NCBI RefSeq assembly: GCF_006345805.1 | Contig: NW_021830009.1 | Coordinates: forward strand, 1 to 5,032 | Direction: 5' to 3' | Source of the DNA: Octopus sinensis | Taxonomy: Eukaryota | DNA: 5,032 nucleotides | In this document: in pieces, positions 1-5,032 of the stretch | Layout of the letters: the number at the start of each line of letters is the position of its first letter | How positions within the stretch are numbered: position 1 is the stretch's first letter | The notes under the pieces: generated by a model | Databases searched by the model: none | What the model saw: the letters and a program-made list of their open reading frames with translations, nothing else | Told to the model about the DNA's origin: nothing | Position numbers and translations under genes: made by a program

Positions 1-99
1 GATATGGGTTATTTCCTTAAATCTAATATGGGACTTGGAATATGTGATAAATTGCGTAATTATTATTTAATTTTGGAAACTTCGTATTGTGAGGATATG

Positions 100-161
100 G
101 GGGCACATTAGATTATGTAATAAATTGCGCAATTTTAGAAGGTCCGTAGAACGCAAATATC
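100..161. repeat. 62-bp 'S' monomer with variant head GGGGCACATTAG and a 12-bp internal deletion (also at 1933-1994, 3382-3443, 4022-4083, 4669-4725)
   Basis: TTGCG[TAATATATTATG]CAAT is reduced to TTGCGCAAT in all five copies, so the deletion is not a read error. Confidence 0.95.
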
Positions 162-626
162 GGGGTACTTGAGAATATGTGATAAATTTCGTAATATATT
201 ATTCAATTTTGGAAACTCCGTATTGTGAGGATATGGGGTACTTGAGATTATGTAATAAATTGCGTAATATATGATGCAATTTTAGAAGATCCGTAGAATG
301 CAAATATCGGGGTACTTGAGAATATGTGATAAATTGCGTAATATATTATGCAATTTTGGAAACTCCGTATTGTGAGGATATGGGGGAATTTGAGATTATG
401 TAATAAATTGCGTAATATATTATTCAATTATGGAAACTCCGTATTGTGAGGATTTGGGGGTACTTGAGATTATGTAATAAATTGCGTAATATATGATGCA
501 ATTTTAGAAGATCCGTAGAATGCCAATATCGGGGTACTTGAGATTATGTAATAAATTGCGTAATATATTATGCAATTTTTGAAACTCCATATTGTGAAGA
601 TATGGGGGTACTTGAGATTATGTAAT

Positions 627-652
627 AAATTGCGTAATATATTATGCAATTT
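627..652. other. 26-bp imperfect dyad AAATTGCGTAATATATTATGCAATTT (representative copy; monomer positions 23-48)
   Basis: The reverse complement is AAATTGCATAATATATTACGCAATTT, so 12 of 13 symmetric pairs are Watson-Crick and one is G/T. It has this form in E, H and I monomers and extra mismatches in D, G, C, F, J, K and X. Confidence 0.95.
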
Positions 653-1024
653 TAGAAGGTCCGTAGAACGCAAATATCGGGGTACTTGAGAATATGTGAT
701 AAATTGCGTAATATATTATTTAATTTTGGAAACTCCGTATTGTTAGGATATGGGGGTACTTGAGAATATGTGATAAATTGCGTAATATATTATTCAATTT
801 TGGAAACTCTGTATTGTTAGGATATGGGGGTACTTGAGATTATGTAATAAATTGCGTAATATATTATGCAATTTTAGAAGGTCCGTAGAACGCAAATATC
901 GGGGTACTTGAGAATATGTGATAAATTGCGTAATATATGATGCAATTTTAGAAGATCCGTAGAATGCCAATATCGGGGTACTTGAGATTATGTAATAAAT
1001 TGCGTAATATATTATGCAATTTTT

Positions 1025-1452
1025 GAAACTCCGTATTGTGAGGATATGGGGGAATTTGAGATTATGTAATAAATTGCGTAATATATTATTCAATTATGGA
1101 AACTCCGTATTGTGAGGATTTGGGGGTACTTGAGATTATGTAATAAATTGCGTAATATATGATGCAATTTTAGAAGATCCGTAGAATGCCAATATCGGGG
1201 TACTTGAGATTATGTAATAAATTGCGTAATATATTATGCAATTTTTGAAACTCCATATTGTGAAGATATGGGGGTACTTGAGATTATGTAATAAATTGCG
1301 TAATATATTATGCAATTTTAGAAGGTCCGTAGAACGCAAATATCGGGGTACTTGAGAATATGTGATAAATTGCGTAATATATTATTTAATTTTGGAAACT
1401 CCGTATTGTTAGGATATGGGGGTACTTGAGAATATGTGATAAATTGCGTAAT
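1025..1452. repeat. 428-bp perfect internal duplicate of 359-786 (offset 666 bp = 9 monomers)
   Basis: Monomer-by-monomer comparison (E tail, F, G, H, I, J, next head) shows no difference. The ORF track independently gives identical 67-aa translations at 470..673 and 1136..1339, 666 bp apart. Confidence 0.93.
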
Positions 1453-1859
1453 TATTATTTAATTTTGGAAACTCTGTATGTTAGGATATGGGGTACTTGA
1501 GATTATGTAATAAATTGCGTAATATATTATGCAATTTTAGAAGGTCCGTAGAACGCAAATATCGGGGTACTTGAGATTATGTAATAAATTGCGTAATATA
1601 TGATGCAATTTTAGAAGATCCGTAGAATGCCAATATCGGGGTACTTGAGATTATGTAATAAATTGCGTAATATATTATGCAATTTTAGAAGATCCGTAGA
1701 ATGCCAATATCGGGGTACTTGAGATTATGTAATAAATTGCGTAATATATTATGCAATTTTAGAAGGTCCGTAGAACGCAAATATCGGGGTACTTGAGAAT
1801 ATGTGATAAATTGCGTAATATATTATTTAATTTTGGAAACTCCGTATTGTTAGGATATG

Positions 1860-3309
1860 GGGGTACTTGAGAATATGTGATAAATTGCGTAATTATTATT
1901 TAATTTTGGAAACTTCGTATTGTGAGGATATGGGGGCACATTAGATTATGTAATAAATTGCGCAATTTTAGAAGGTCCGTAGAACGCAAATATCGGGGTA
2001 CTTGAGAATATGTGATAAATTTCGTAATATATTATTCAATTTTGGAAACTCCGTATTGTGAGGATATGGGGTACTTGAGATTATGTAATAAATTGCGTAA
2101 TATATGATGCAATTTTAGAAGATCCGTAGAATGCAAATATCGGGGTACTTGAGAATATGTGATAAATTGCGTAATATATTATGCAATTTTGGAAACTCCG
2201 TATTGTGAGGATATGGGGGAATTTGAGATTATGTAATAAATTGCGTAATATATCATTCAATTATGGAAACTCCGTATTGTGAGGATTTGGGGGTACTTGA
2301 GATTATGTAATAAATTGCGTAATATATGATGCAATTTTAGAAGATCCGTAGAATGCCAATATCGGGGTACTTGAGATTATGTAATAAATTGCGTAATATA
2401 TTATGCATTTTTGACACTCCATATTGTGAAGATATGGGGGTACTTGAGATTATGTAATAAATTGCGTACTATATTATGCAATTTTAGAAGGTCCGTAGAA
2501 CGCAAATATCGGGTACTTGAGAATATGTGATAAATTGCGTAATATTATTTAATTTTGGAACTCCGTATTGTTAGGATATGGGGGTACTTGAGAATATGTG
2601 ATAAATTGCGTAATATATTATTCAATTTTGGAAACTCTGTATTGTTAGGATATGGGGGTACTTGAGATTATGTAATAAATTGCGTAATATATTATGCAAT
2701 TTTAGAAGGTCCGTAGAACGCAAATATCGGGGTACTTGAGATTATGTAATAAATTGCGTAATATATGATGCAATTTTAGAAGATCCGTAGAATGCCAATA
2801 TCGGGGTACTTGAGATTATGTAATAAATTGCGTAATATATTATGCAATTTTTGAAACTCCGTATTGTTAGGATATGGGGGTACTTGAGAATATGTGATAA
2901 ATTGCGTAATATATTATTCAATTTGGAACTCTGTATTGTTAGATATGGGGTACTTGAGATTATGTATTTGCGTTATATTATGCAATTTTAGAAGGTCCGT
3001 AGAACGCAAATATCGGGTACTTGAGATTATGTAATAATTGCGTAATATATGATGCAATTTTAGAAGATCCGTAGAATGCCAATATCGGGGTACTTGAGAT
3101 TATTTCTGACATTTGCGTAATATATTATGCAATTTTTTGAACCTCCATATTGTGAAGATATGGGGTACTTGAGATTATGTAATAATTGCGTAATATATTA
3201 TGCAATTTTAGAAGGTCCGTAGAACGCAAATATCGGGGTACTTGAGAATATGTGATAAATTGCGTAATATATTATTTAATTTTGGAAACTCCGTTTGTTG
3301 TTAGGATAT
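1860..3309. repeat. Higher-order repeat unit 2 (20 monomers; X S C D E F* G H I J K I G [H/J] K I G H I J)
   Basis: S monomers at 1933 and 3382 (offset 1449 bp). The diagnostic monomer variants occur in the same order as in unit 1 for the first 13 monomers. Confidence 0.88.
2581..3161. repeat. Tandem 4-monomer sub-unit (K I G H) x2 within HOR unit 2
   Basis: K (ACTCTGTATTGTTAG) at 2581 and 2877, I at 2655 and 2947, G at 2729 and 3015, H-type at 2803 (chimeric) and 3087. The second copy carries many small deletions. Confidence 0.8.
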
Positions 3310-3947
3310 GGGGTACTTGAGAATATGTGATAAATGCGTAATTATTATTTAATTTTGGAAACTTCGTATTGTGAGGATATGTGGGCACATTAGATTATGT
3401 AATAAATTGCGCAATTTTAGAAGGTCCGTAGAACGCAAATATCGGGGTACTTGAGAATATGTGATAAATTCGTAATATATATTCCATTTTGGAAACTCCG
3501 TATTGTGAGGATATGGGGTACTTGAGATTATGTAATAAATTGCGTAATATATGATGCAATTTTAGAAGATCCGTAGAATGCAAATATCGGGGTACTTGAG
3601 AATATGTGATAAATTGCGTATATATATGCAATTTTGGAAACTCCGTATTGTGAGGATAGGGGGAATTTGAGATTATGTAATAATTGCGTAATATATCATT
3701 CAATTATGGAAACTCCGTATTGGTGAGGATTTGGGGTACTTGAGATTATGTAATAAATGCGTAATATATGAATGCATTTTAGAAATCCGTAGAAGTGCCA
3801 TATCGGGGTACTTGAGATTATGTAATAAATTGCGTAATATATTGCATTTTAGAAGGTCCGTAGAACGCAAATATCGGGGTACTTGAGAATGTGATAAATT
3901 GCGTAATATATTATTTAATTTTGGAGACTCCGTATTGTTAGGATATG
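3310..3947. repeat. Higher-order repeat unit 3 (9 monomers; X S C D E F* G I J, lacking H)
   Basis: S at 3382-3443. G (3733-3804) is followed directly by I (3805-3875), with no H monomer (CTCCATATTGTGAAG) between them. Confidence 0.85.
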
Positions 3948-4597
3948 GGGGTACTTGAGAATATGTGATAAATTGCGTAATATATTATTTAATTTTGGAA
4001 ACTTCGTATTGTGAGGATATGGGGGCACTTTAGATTATGTAATAAATTGCGCAATTTTAGAAGATCCGTAGAATGCAAATATCGGGGTACTTGAGAATAT
4101 GTGATAATTTGCGTAATATATTATGCAATTTTGGAAACTCCGTATTGTGAGGATATGGGGTACTTGAGATTATGTAATAAATTGCGTAATATATTATGCA
4201 ATTTTAGTAGATCCATAGAATGCAAATATCGGGGTTCTTGAGAATATGTGATAAATTGCGTAATATATTATACAATTTTTGAAACTCCATATTGTGAAGA
4301 TATGGGGGCACTTTAGATAATGTAATAAATTACGTAATATATTATTCAATTTTGGAAACTCCGTATTGTGAGGATGTGGGGGTACTTGAGATTATGTTAT
4401 AAATTGCGTAATATATTATGCAATTTTTGAAACTCCATATTGTGAAGATATGGGGGTACTTGAGATTATGTAATAAATTGCGTATTATATTATGCAATTT
4501 TAGAAGGTCCGTAGAACGCAATATCGGGGTACTTGAGAATATGTGATAAATTGCGTAATATATATTTAATTTTGGAAACTCGTATTGTTAGGATATG
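3948..4597. repeat. Higher-order repeat unit 4, variant (9 monomers; X' [S/D] E N1 N2 N3 H I J)
   Basis: The short monomer at 4022-4083 has head GGGGCACTTTAG and a D-type tail. Three monomers seen nowhere else occupy 4157-4378. The standard H I J run follows. Confidence 0.85.
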
Positions 4598-5032
4598 GGG
4601 GTACTTGAGAATATGTGATAAATTGCGAATTATTATTTAATTTTGGAACTTCGTATTGTGAGGATATGGGGGCACATTAGATTATGTAATAATTGCGCAA
4701 TTTTAGAAGGTCCGTAAGCCATATCGGGGTACTTGAGATATTGATAAATTTCGTAATATATTATTCAATTTTGAAACCCGTATTGTGAGGGTATGGGGTA
4801 CTTGAGATTATGTAATAAATTGCGAATATATGATGCAATTTTAGAAGATCCGTAGAATGCAAATATCGGGGTACTTGAGAATATGTGATAAATTGCGTAA
4901 TATATTATGCAATTTGGAAACTCCGTATTGTGAGGATATGGGGGAATTGGAGATTATGTAATAAATTGCGTGATATTATTCAATTATGGAAACTCCGTAT
5001 TGTGAGGATTTGGGGTACTTGAGATTATGTTA
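4598..5032. repeat. Higher-order repeat unit 5, truncated by the window end (X S C D E F ...)
   Basis: X at 4598, S at 4669, C (AATTTCG) at 4726, D at 4795, E at 4868, F (GGGGAATT..., CAATTATGG, GGATTTG) at 4941. Confidence 0.85.

What the first reader, a model, noticed from the sequence alone, without database searches (positions are those of the whole stretch)
617..650. Each monomer carries three bZIP-like palindromic sites at 12-bp spacing, and the variants convert them between known bZIP specificities
Seen: ATTATGTAAT (617-626), ATTGCGTAAT (629-638) and ATTATGCAAT (641-650) sit at exact 12-bp spacing in the conserved half of the monomer. Recurrent variants give TGATGCAAT (11 intact copies: 272, 494, 938, 1160, 1601, 2105, 2327, 2766, 3050, 3552, 4831), ATTGCGCAAT (5 copies: 124, 1957, 3406, 4046, 4692) and ATTACGTAAT (4329-4338). 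Established: RTTAYGTAAY is the PAR-bZIP/NFIL3 consensus (HLF/DBP/TEF; Drosophila Vrille/Pdp1/Giant). ATTGCGCAAT is the optimal C/EBP palindrome. TTGCGTAA is a C/EBP-PAR hybrid site. TGATGCAAT is the C/EBP-ATF composite element (ATF4 amino-acid response element, reverse complement ATTGCATCA). Inference: if the host is a eukaryote or a nuclear virus, the array could act as a very dense bZIP-binding platform or sink, with monomer types encoding different dimer preferences and the a-head (AATATGTGAT) and TATTT/TATTC variants switching sites off. Caveat: short AT-rich palindromes arise easily, and the host is unknown.
Basis: partly seen in the sequence, partly recalled or inferred. Interest (0 to 1): 0.75.

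Follow-up and report, generated by a model that had tools for sequence, protein, structure and literature searches.

The report
bZIP-like boxes in a 74-bp satellite
The window is an ordinary-looking 74-base satellite repeat whose conserved half is a tripled 12-base unit that reads like C/EBP/PAR-type bZIP binding sites. The match is real on paper, but nothing here shows that any protein uses it, and the variants look like lineage markers rather than a binding code.

Summary
Every coordinate and count in the finding is correct. The whole window is a 74-bp, AT-rich satellite of 69 monomers arranged in higher-order repeats.

"Each monomer carries three" is overstated. Only 12 of 69 monomers hold the exact triple, and 22 of 69 hold three bZIP-like sites of any kind.

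The 12-bp spacing exists because the conserved half is a tripled 12-mer, ATTRYGYAATWW. ATTGCGCAAT is not a point conversion. It is made by deleting exactly one 12-bp unit in a 62-bp monomer that sits at one higher-order-repeat position. TGATGCAAT, AATATGTGAT and ATTATTYAAT are each tied to one monomer lineage.

The decamers beat dinucleotide shuffles (3 observed against 0.015 expected). Published ITC shows NFIL3 binds them, but 4-12-fold worse than the optimum, and C/EBP and NFIL3 preferences overlap. Homeodomain, octamer, GATA and SOX consensus sequences also fit the monomers.

The host could not be identified. There was no prokaryotic, viral, plasmid or metagenome relative.

Protein binding cannot be tested here. 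The best reading is a heterochromatic satellite with, at most, incidental decoy sites, as known for C/EBPα on mouse satellite.

The parts
36..5032 (.). 74-bp tandem satellite array: 69 monomers, 31.5% GC, G-rich on the + strand. Higher-order repeat units restart at 36, 1869, 3319, (3957) and 4607.
   Evidence: TRF finds period 74 and 63 copies. nhmmer segmentation gives the monomers and their alignment. One search gives the monomer-type string. HOR copies are 94-99% identical, against about 85% for neighbouring monomers. GC skew is +0.39 to +0.45 throughout.
614..687 (+). Reference monomer (type H, subfamily A) that holds the three sites named in the finding.
   Evidence: This exact 74-mer occurs 6 times.
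617..652 (.). 36-bp block made of three 12-bp subrepeats: ATTATGTAATAA / ATTGCGTAATAT / ATTATGCAATTT.
   Evidence: Lag-12 identity is 17 of 24. Shuffles reach this at a rate of 7e-5, or 0.0014 when any lag from 6 to 18 is allowed.
617..626 (.). Site 1, ATTATGTAAT. It fits the PAR/NFIL3 consensus RTTAYGTAAY with TG in place of the central CG. It is replaced by AATATGTGAT in 25 monomers.
   Evidence: NFIL3 Kd is 0.52 uM against 0.042 uM for ATTACGTAAT (PMC10941009).
629..638 (.). Site 2, ATTGCGTAAT, a C/EBP half plus a PAR half. It is the best-kept site (48 exact copies), and its CpG is present in 69 of 69 monomers.
   Evidence: NFIL3 Kd is 0.18 uM.
641..650 (.). Site 3, ATTATGCAAT. It is the most variable site, with 22 exact copies. 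Variants are ATGATGCAAT (11), ATTATTTAAT (12), ATTATTCAAT (10) and ATCATTCAAT (2).
627..652 (.). 26-bp near-palindrome AAATTGCGTAATA|TATTATGCAATTT, formed by sites 2 and 3 around the perfect palindrome TAATATATTA. It is present only in monomers that carry ATTATGCAAT.
   Evidence: The DNA fold gives an 11-bp stem, with a centroid energy of -6.5 kcal/mol. The stem is lost or shortened in the other monomer types. TAATATATTA occurs 36 times.
109..170 (+). 62-bp monomer in which a 12-bp deletion (TAATATATTATG) fuses site 2 and site 3 into ATTGCGCAAT (124-133). The same HOR position recurs at 1942-2003, 3391-3452, 4031-4092 and 4678-4732.
   Evidence: The aligned gap spans columns 22-33 in exactly these five monomers.
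271..280 (.). ATGATGCAAT, the site-3 variant that contains the CARE-like TGATGCAAT. All 11 copies lie in the A2 lineage (tail AGAAGATCCGTAGAATGC).
691..700 (.). AATATGTGAT, the 'a-head' variant of site 1. The two changes are always linked. 24 of 25 copies are in subfamily B. The variant creates TGATAA, a GATA-type consensus.
654..678 (.). Variable block (monomer positions 41-65) that separates subfamily A (AGAAGGTCCGTAGAACGCAAATATC) from subfamily B (GGAAACTCCGTATTGTGAGGATATG). About 11 of 25 positions differ, while the rest of the monomer is nearly identical.
   Evidence: Per-column counts. The split is 30 A and 39 B monomers.
51..71 (.). Recurrent monomer type with a 1-bp shorter spacer (GCGTAAT-TATTATTTAAT), so sites 2 and 3 are 11 bp apart rather than 12.
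   Evidence: starts 54, 1446, 1887, 3336. One search shows the aligned gap at column 26.

Best explanation
The window is a stretch of a eukaryote-type, non-coding, AT-rich 74-bp satellite organised in variable-length higher-order repeats, most likely heterochromatic. The exact location (pericentromeric, centromeric or subtelomeric) is unknown.

The conserved half of the monomer arose from a 12-bp unit, ATTRYGYAATWW, present in three tandem copies. That origin accounts for both the three pseudo-palindromic decamers and their 12-bp spacing. Because the founding 12-mer is a TTNNGNAA-type dyad, all three copies read as C/EBP/PAR bZIP sites.

The 'variants' are a handful of old mutations: T5A with A11G, T30G, G33T, C34T, and one deletion of a whole 12-bp unit. 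They spread by amplification of monomer lineages and HOR units through unequal exchange or gene conversion. They are not a code of dimer preferences.

If bZIP proteins of the host do touch the array, it would be as incidental medium-affinity decoy sites, as described for C/EBP alpha on mouse satellite.

Shown here: the array, the HOR structure, the subrepeat, the deletion, the lineage linkage, the excess over shuffles, and the match to measured NFIL3 sites.
Inferred: eukaryotic host, heterochromatic location, absence of selection for bZIP binding.
For: - Array and HOR structure.
- No coding capacity. The longest ORF is 102 aa, a 99-aa ORF has no protein relative, and there are no Rfam or tRNA hits.
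- 12-bp subrepeat: 17 of 24 identities at lag 12, p = 7e-5.
- ATTGCGCAAT occurs only in 62-bp monomers that lack exactly one 12-bp unit, at one HOR position.
- Site states are tied to lineage. TGATGCAAT is 11/11 in A2, ATTATTYAAT 22/22 in B, and AATATGTGAT 24/25 in B.
- Within the conserved half, the frequent variation falls inside sites 1 and 3 (positions 5, 11, 30, 33, 34), while the spacers are invariant.
- The optimal palindromes are rare (1 and 5 copies). The common sites are 4-12-fold weaker for NFIL3 than ATTACGTAAT.
- Other motif families fit the same monomers: the P2 homeodomain palindrome TAATATATTA 36 times, octamer ATGCAAAT 6 times, TGATAA 27 times, ATTGTT 10 times.
Against: - The decamers match stringent bZIP consensus sequences far better than shuffles do (P about 0.002-0.006 per site). 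They are the strongest hits in a 25-motif panel.
- Site 2 and its CpG are almost invariant, while other CpGs in the monomer decay (positions 49/50 and 56). That could reflect constraint.
- The sharp contrast between a nearly fixed 40-bp half and a 25-bp block with about 44% divergence hints that something holds the conserved half constant.
- The host and chromosomal location are unknown.
- The argument against selection rests on few independent mutations.
Confidence: 0.6

Rival explanations
1. The array is a dense, selected bZIP platform or sink, and monomer types (PAR-like, C/EBP-like, CARE-like, switched-off) titrate different bZIP dimers.
For: - There are exact matches to RTTAYGTAAY, RTTGCGYAAY and TGATGNAAT.
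- NFIL3 binds ATTGCGTAAT and ATTATGTAAT at 0.18 and 0.52 uM in ITC.
- C/EBP alpha is sequestered by decoy sites in mouse satellite.
- Site 2 is nearly invariant.
Against: - Only 12 of 69 monomers carry the full triple.
- The optimal sites are rare, and the C/EBP palindrome is a by-product of a deletion.
- The variants are lineage-linked single events.
- C/EBP and NFIL3 preferences overlap within a few fold, so the variants do not switch partners cleanly.
- Sites 1 and 3 vary more than the spacers do.
- With 12-bp spacing, neighbouring dimers sit about 51 degrees apart around the helix, so no common face is built (inference from B-DNA geometry).
Confidence: 0.12
2. The conserved 40-bp half is a docking box for a different satellite-binding protein. 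Candidates are a paired-class homeodomain or Pax factor on TAATATATTA, an AT-hook protein of the D1/HMGA kind on the AT runs, or a lineage-specific CENP-B-like protein. The A/B variable block would then play the role of the alternative A/B boxes of primate alpha satellite.
For: - TAATNNATTA is present 37 times (TAATATATTA 36 times). It lies in the least variable part of the monomer, positions 22-31.
- The spacers AA and AT are invariant.
- Divergence is concentrated in one 25-bp block that defines two subfamilies.
- Pax3/Pax9, HMGA and D1 binding to satellites is established, and so are the alpha-satellite A/B boxes (own knowledge, not checked here).
Against: - The P2 match is only modestly unlikely by chance (P about 0.03-0.04 per monomer), weaker than the bZIP matches.
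- No CENP-B box is present, even with 2 mismatches allowed.
- No binding data exist.
Confidence: 0.18
3. What matters is dyad symmetry. The 26-bp near-palindrome, and a second hairpin in some B monomers, favour cruciform or other non-B DNA, as proposed for centromeric satellites that lack a CENP-B box.
For: - An 11-bp stem is predicted for AAATTGCGTAA/TTATGCAATTT.
- Monomer 540-613 folds with z = -4.3.
- The non-B-DNA idea is cited in PMC8097292.
Against: - The dyad exists only in monomers with ATTATGCAAT (22 of 69).
- The other types fold no better than shuffles, with z from -0.96 to +0.43.
- A direct repeat of a palindromic unit gives dyads automatically, so the dyad adds no independent evidence.
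Confidence: 0.07
4. The array belongs to a prokaryote, plasmid, phage or large DNA virus (for example an hr-like enhancer/origin repeat), not to a eukaryotic chromosome.
For: Baculovirus homologous regions carry clustered CRE-like bZIP sites between palindromes (PMC3230853).
Against: - There are no matches in viral contigs, phage records, plasmids or 185,579 prokaryotic species genomes.
- 69 or more monomers with higher-order structure filling 5 kb, with no flanking genes, is unlike hrs, which are described as a few repeats (own knowledge).
Confidence: 0.03

Closest known systems
C/EBP decoy sites in mouse pericentromeric (major/gamma) satellite
   Same: A tandem satellite whose monomers carry C/EBP-type consensus sites, so that a bZIP factor can be soaked up by heterochromatin (PMC8754650; PMC2064789 citing Liu et al. 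2007).
   Different: In mouse, binding and sequestration were shown experimentally. Here there is only sequence. The monomer is 74 bp rather than 234 bp, has up to three sites at 12-bp spacing, and shares no sequence with any record I could search.
PAR-bZIP/NFIL3 D-box and C/EBP palindromes (TTACGTAA, TTGCGCAA)
   Same: ATTATGTAAT, ATTGCGTAAT, ATTACGTAAT and ATTGCGCAAT are the very decamers measured in ITC with NFIL3 and C/EBP alpha/beta (PMC10941009).
   Different: The common satellite versions are the weaker ones (4-12-fold for NFIL3). They sit in a repeat array, not in promoters or enhancers. The host's bZIP repertoire is unknown.
CENP-B box / pJ-alpha A/B boxes of primate alpha satellite
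   Same: Two monomer subfamilies differ mainly in one short block while the rest of the monomer is shared, and the array has higher-order repeat organisation.
   Different: There is no CENP-B box, even with 2 mismatches allowed. The monomer is 74 bp rather than 171 bp. Centromeric location is not shown.
Conserved-box satellites such as the 19-bp box repeats of Meloidogyne holocentromeres
   Same: Short monomers (45-83 bp) that share a conserved box with dyad potential inside otherwise divergent repeats (PMC8097292).
   Different: Those repeats are more than 50% GC with a box of about 80% GC. This satellite is 31.5% GC and its conserved part is AT-rich.
Baculovirus homologous regions (hrs) with clustered bZIP sites
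   Same: Tandem repeats of about 70 bp in which CRE-like bZIP sites are clustered and thought to recruit host bZIP factors (PMC3230853).
   Different: hrs are short clusters inside a viral genome, built around 30-bp palindromes that bind IE-1. Here there are 69 or more monomers with HOR structure and no viral match.

Membership tests
Satellite DNA with higher-order repeats | Long head-to-tail array of a short monomer | tested here: met
   Period 74, with 63-69 copies filling the window.
Satellite DNA with higher-order repeats | Multi-monomer units more alike than neighbouring monomers | tested here: met
   HOR copies are 94-99% identical, against about 85% for adjacent monomers. The same monomer-type order restarts at 36, 1869, 3319 and 4607.
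Satellite DNA with higher-order repeats | Non-coding | tested here: met
   The longest ORF is 102 aa and is periodic. There is no protein relative, no Rfam family and no tRNA.
Satellite DNA with higher-order repeats | Resides in a eukaryotic chromosome | not testable with these tools
   No eukaryotic nucleotide collection is available. There are only negative results for prokaryotes, viruses, plasmids and metagenomes.
bZIP (C/EBP/PAR/CARE) binding-site cluster | Sequence match to the published consensus or to measured sites | tested here: met
   Exact matches. The same decamers were measured by ITC.
bZIP (C/EBP/PAR/CARE) binding-site cluster | Sites kept better than the surrounding sequence | tested here: not met
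   This holds for sites 1 and 3. The frequent variants in the conserved half (positions 5, 11, 30, 33, 34) all fall inside them, while the spacers are invariant. Site 2 is well kept, but so is all of positions 12-29, so for site 2 alone the test is inconclusive.
bZIP (C/EBP/PAR/CARE) binding-site cluster | Occupancy by a bZIP protein in the host | not testable with these tools
   The host is unknown and no ChIP or EMSA data are available.
CENP-B-box satellite | TTCGNNNNANNCGGG core | tested here: not met
   0 matches with up to 2 mismatches.
Baculovirus-type hr repeat | Lies in a viral genome, as short clusters of repeats around 30-bp palindromes | tested here: not met
   No viral or phage match. 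There are 69 monomers with HOR structure and no flanking genes.
Paired-class homeodomain P2 site array | TAATNNATTA palindrome | tested here: met
   37 copies in the window, with P about 0.03-0.04 per monomer against shuffles. This is a sequence match only, and binding was not tested.

The most novel reading that the evidence does not exclude
The conserved half of this satellite is held constant by selection because host C/EBP/PAR/ATF4-type bZIP dimers bind it. The array then works as a genome-scale titration device whose monomer types (three-site, two-site fused C/EBP palindrome, CARE-type, switched-off) buffer different dimers. That would be a satellite-encoded regulator of bZIP dosage.
Probability: 0.07. 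Interest if true: 0.65.

Novelty: new member of a known kind. Interest (0 to 1): 0.22.

Why it matters
If a satellite really titrated bZIP factors in a way that depends on monomer type, it would tie repeat copy number and monomer make-up to circadian, stress and differentiation programmes, and it would extend the single mouse C/EBP alpha example.

As the evidence stands, the value is mainly cautionary. The "three sites at exact spacing" and the "conversions between specificities" fall out of a tripled 12-mer, one unit deletion and the copying of monomer lineages. They need no function to explain them.

The satellite itself has no relative in any collection I could search. Naming its host is the first thing to do.

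Tried and rejected
**Host identification (all negative)**
- An exact 30-mer and 25-mer, and two gapped two-monomer patterns, against viral contigs, metagenome contigs and prokaryotic genomes.
- blastn against phage records and plasmids.
- A search of the large protein collection with the 99-aa satellite ORF.

**Chance hits set aside**
- The six metagenome hits were inspected. L001, L002, L004 and L005 hold an unrelated 63-64-bp repeat that shares only AAATTGCGTAAT. L003 and L006 have no related repeat. All were rejected as chance.

**Literature searches**
- Full-text searches for monomer substrings on both strands, for '74-bp satellite' phrases and for satellitome names ending in -74 found no match.
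- TfuSat05-74 (not among the barn-owl families with more than 50% A+T) and CmoSat03-74 (52.7% A+T) do not fit a repeat with 68.5% A+T.
- The Meloidogyne 45-83-bp centromeric repeats were considered and rejected because they are more than 50% GC.

**Other ideas tested**
- CENP-B box: rejected.
- A conserved cruciform: rejected as a general feature, because only some monomer types fold better than shuffles.
- Whole-monomer 12-bp periodicity: not supported. Lag-12 matches are 22-29 of 74 across the three monomer types, against roughly 22 expected from base composition, and lag 8 scores as high or higher. Only the 36-bp block is periodic.

**Caveat on one count**
- The PAR count of 2 is an artefact of my 14-base wrap-around. 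One search gives the correct count of 1.

Full report
**What the window is**

All 5032 bases are one tandem array. Tandem Repeats Finder reports a 74-bp period over 117-4701 (63 copies, 80% matches) and continues to 5030. A profile built from twelve clean monomers cuts the window into 69 monomers, which I aligned column by column. The composition is 31.5% GC. GC skew is constant and strong, +0.39 to +0.45, so the + strand is G-rich.

Monomers fall into two subfamilies:
- A: 30 monomers, tail TTTTAGAAGGTCCGTAGAACGCAAATATCGGGG.
- B: 39 monomers, tail TTTTGGAAACTCCGTATTGTGAGGATATGGGGG.

They differ at about 11 of 25 positions in one block (monomer positions 41-65) and hardly anywhere else.

Ten exact monomer types recur. 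Their order (X A B C D E F G H I J ...) restarts at 36, 1869, 3319 and 4607, with a diverged restart at 3957. Corresponding multi-monomer stretches are 94-99% identical, against about 85% for neighbouring monomers. This is a higher-order repeat (HOR) satellite with units of variable length.

Nothing is encoded. The longest ORF is 102 aa and periodic. A 99-aa ORF has no relative among 5.8 billion protein clusters. There is no Rfam family and no tRNA.

From about 2373 onward, one-base gaps rise from 0.6% to 3.9% relative to the recurrent monomer types. This looks like long-read error and lowers the counts of "intact" sites in the second half.

**Check of the observation**

This covers the three decamers at 617, 629 and 641, the eleven TGATGCAAT, the five ATTGCGCAAT and the single ATTACGTAAT.

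The sites are far more frequent than composition predicts. There are three matches to RTTRYGYAAY per monomer, against 0.015-0.018 in dinucleotide shuffles, and none of 20,000 shuffles reaches three.

The title overstates the case:
- The exact 34-base triple is present in 12 of 69 monomers.
- Counting any RTTRYGYAAY or TGATGCAAT, 22 monomers have three sites, 19 two, 21 one and 7 none. In the cleaner first 32 monomers the split is 15/8/7/2.
- The spacing is 12 bp in 56 adjacent pairs but 11 bp in a recurrent monomer type (GCGTAATTATTAT at 54, 1446, 1887, 3336).

**Where the three sites and their spacing come from**

Positions 4-39 of the monomer read ATTATGTAATAA / ATTGCGTAATAT / ATTATGCAATTT. 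These are three copies of one 12-mer, with 17 of 24 identities at lag 12. Shuffles of the block reach this at 7e-5, or 0.0014 allowing any lag from 6 to 18. The sites are therefore one founding unit copied three times, and the spacing is simply the unit length.

Because the unit is itself a near-palindrome, direct copies also create larger dyads. Sites 2 and 3 form the 26-bp near-palindrome AAATTGCGTAATA|TATTATGCAATTT around the perfect palindrome TAATATATTA.

The "optimal C/EBP palindrome" ATTGCGCAAT is not a point variant. It occurs only in five 62-bp monomers that lack exactly one 12-bp unit (TAATATATTATG). The deletion joins the left part of site 2 to the right part of site 3, and all five monomers sit at the same HOR position. 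These monomers therefore carry two sites, not three.

**Pattern of the variants**

In the conserved half, only positions 5 and 11 (site 1) and positions 30, 33 and 34 (site 3) vary often. The two spacers (AA, AT) never vary. Site 2 is almost fixed, and its CpG is present in 69 of 69 monomers.

Each variant is tied to a lineage:
- AATATGTGAT: the two changes are always together, and 24 of 25 copies are in subfamily B.
- TGATGCAAT: 11 of 11 copies are in the A2 lineage (AGAAGATCCGTAGAATGC).
- ATTATTYAAT: 22 of 22 copies are in subfamily B.

The "recurrent variants" are thus a few old mutations copied along with their monomers and HOR units. They are not repeated independent conversions. I see no sign that sites 1 and 3 are protected. 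For site 2 the data are compatible with constraint, but there are too few independent events to say.

**How bZIP-like are they, and do the variants switch partners?**

In published ITC, the NFIL3 bZIP domain binds (PMC10941009):
- ATTACGTAAT at 0.042 uM
- ATTGCGTAAT (site 2) at 0.18 uM
- ATTATGTAAT (site 1) at 0.52 uM
- ATTGCGCAAT at 0.81 uM

CpG methylation lowers affinity about 14-fold. [quoted passage not shown]

Two consequences follow. First, the abundant satellite sites are the weaker, TG-centred or hybrid versions, while the optimal palindromes are rare (1 and 5 copies). A selected high-affinity sink would not be expected to look like this. Second, PAR-type and C/EBP-type sites are read by overlapping sets of proteins, so "conversion between specificities" is a matter of a few fold.

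There is also a look-elsewhere problem. In a panel of 25 textbook consensus sequences (taken from my own knowledge), the bZIP decamers are the strongest hits. But the same monomers also carry:
- the paired-homeodomain P2 palindrome TAATATATTA, 36 times
- a perfect octamer ATGCAAAT in A2 monomers, 6 times
- TGATAA, created by the very a-head change said to switch site 1 off, 27 times
- ATTGTT in B monomers, 10 times

**Host**

I could not identify it. Exact and gapped patterns found nothing in viral contigs, in prokaryotic species genomes or, for the exact 25-mer, in metagenome contigs. blastn found nothing in phage records or plasmids.

The gapped metagenome scan returned six contigs. On inspection they hold an unrelated 63-64-bp repeat, or no repeat at all, and share only AAATTGCGTAAT.

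Full-text searches for monomer substrings, for "74-bp satellite" and for satellitome names ending in -74 gave no match. The two 74-bp families found do not match the window's 68.5% A+T. Meloidogyne centromeric repeats are GC-rich.

A long HOR-structured non-coding satellite with no prokaryotic or viral relative is best read as eukaryotic chromosomal DNA. That is an inference, not a demonstration.

**Most likely explanation and rivals**

- Best reading (about 0.6). This is a heterochromatic satellite. Its bZIP-like boxes are inherited copies of one palindromic 12-mer, and its variants are lineage markers. Any bZIP contact would be incidental decoy binding of the kind described for C/EBP alpha on mouse satellite.
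It remains possible. The points above speak against it, but they do not refute it.
- Another protein reads the conserved half, such as a homeodomain or Pax factor on TAATATATTA, an AT-hook protein or a lineage-specific box binder, with the A/B block acting like the A/B boxes of alpha satellite (about 0.18). The invariant spacers and the sharply localised A/B divergence fit this. The CENP-B box itself is absent.
- A structural, non-B-DNA role for the dyads (about 0.07). This is weak, because only monomers with ATTATGCAAT fold better than shuffles.
- A viral or prokaryotic origin (about 0.03). It has no support.

**Comparison with what is known**

The array works like, or could work like, the C/EBP decoy sites of mouse satellite. 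It is built like conserved-box satellites such as the alpha-satellite A/B boxes or the Meloidogyne 19-bp box.

It meets the tests for an HOR satellite, apart from a eukaryotic host, which could not be tested. For a bZIP site cluster it meets the sequence test, fails the conservation test at sites 1 and 3, and cannot be tested for occupancy. It fails the CENP-B box test and the test for a baculovirus hr-type repeat.

**Verdict**

The functional interpretation cannot be decided here, and its more specific parts are better explained by repeat mechanics. This is a new member of a known kind, with low to moderate interest (0.22). Naming the host and mapping chromatin data would settle it quickly.

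Noticed in passing
window 2373-5032 versus 36-2372: One-base gaps relative to the recurrent monomer types rise from 0.6% to 3.9%, mostly in homopolymer runs (GGGGG to GGGG, AAA to AA). It looks like an uncorrected long read or a poorly polished stretch. It lowers the counts of intact sites in the second half.
   Followed up: partly
window 1-35: The window does not begin with a regular monomer. GATATGGG is followed by TTATTTCCTTAAATCTA and then a shortened monomer tail, ATATGGGACTTGG. The corresponding place before the HOR restart at 1869 is regular.
   Followed up: no
window 3097-3111: There is a local scramble. GAGATTATTTCTGACATTTGCG replaces GAGATTATGTAATAAATTGCG and destroys site 1 in that monomer only.
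   Followed up: no
monomer positions 41-65, e.g. window 654-678: The two subfamilies (A and B) differ at about 11 of 25 positions in this one block, while the other 49 positions are nearly identical. This mosaic pattern recalls the alternative A/B boxes of alpha satellite. It may be more informative about function than the bZIP-like sites.
   Followed up: partly
whole window: There is a strong, constant strand asymmetry. GC skew is +0.39 to +0.45 (G 1129 against C 458), with one G4-5 run per monomer.
   Followed up: no
e.g. window 298-305 (ATGCAAAT), 695-700 (TGATAA), 741-746 (ATTGTT): Other textbook transcription-factor consensus sequences are created by the same variants. A2 monomers hold a perfect octamer ATGCAAAT (6 copies), the a-head change creates the GATA-type TGATAA (27 copies), and B monomers hold the SOX/SRY-type ATTGTT (10 copies).
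   Followed up: partly
window 585-607 (monomer 540-613): B monomers with CCATAT carry a second inverted repeat, CTCCATATT/GATATGGGG. This monomer type folds with z = -4.3 as single-stranded DNA, while other B types do not.
   Followed up: partly
monomer positions 20-21, 49-50, 56-57: The site-2 CpG is kept in 69 of 69 monomers. The other CpGs show TpG/CpA variants: CCG to CTG or CCA in 11 monomers, and ACGC to ATGC in about half of the A monomers. Sites 1 and 3 (central TG) look like deaminated forms of CpG-centred palindromes. There are too few independent events for a test.
   Followed up: partly
L001 552-895, L002 803-1109, L004 367-710, L005 346-689: Four metagenome contigs carry an unrelated 63-64-bp tandem repeat, itself a diverged 32-bp dimer, that also contains AAATTGCGTAAT. 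It was found only because I searched for that 12-mer.
   Followed up: partly
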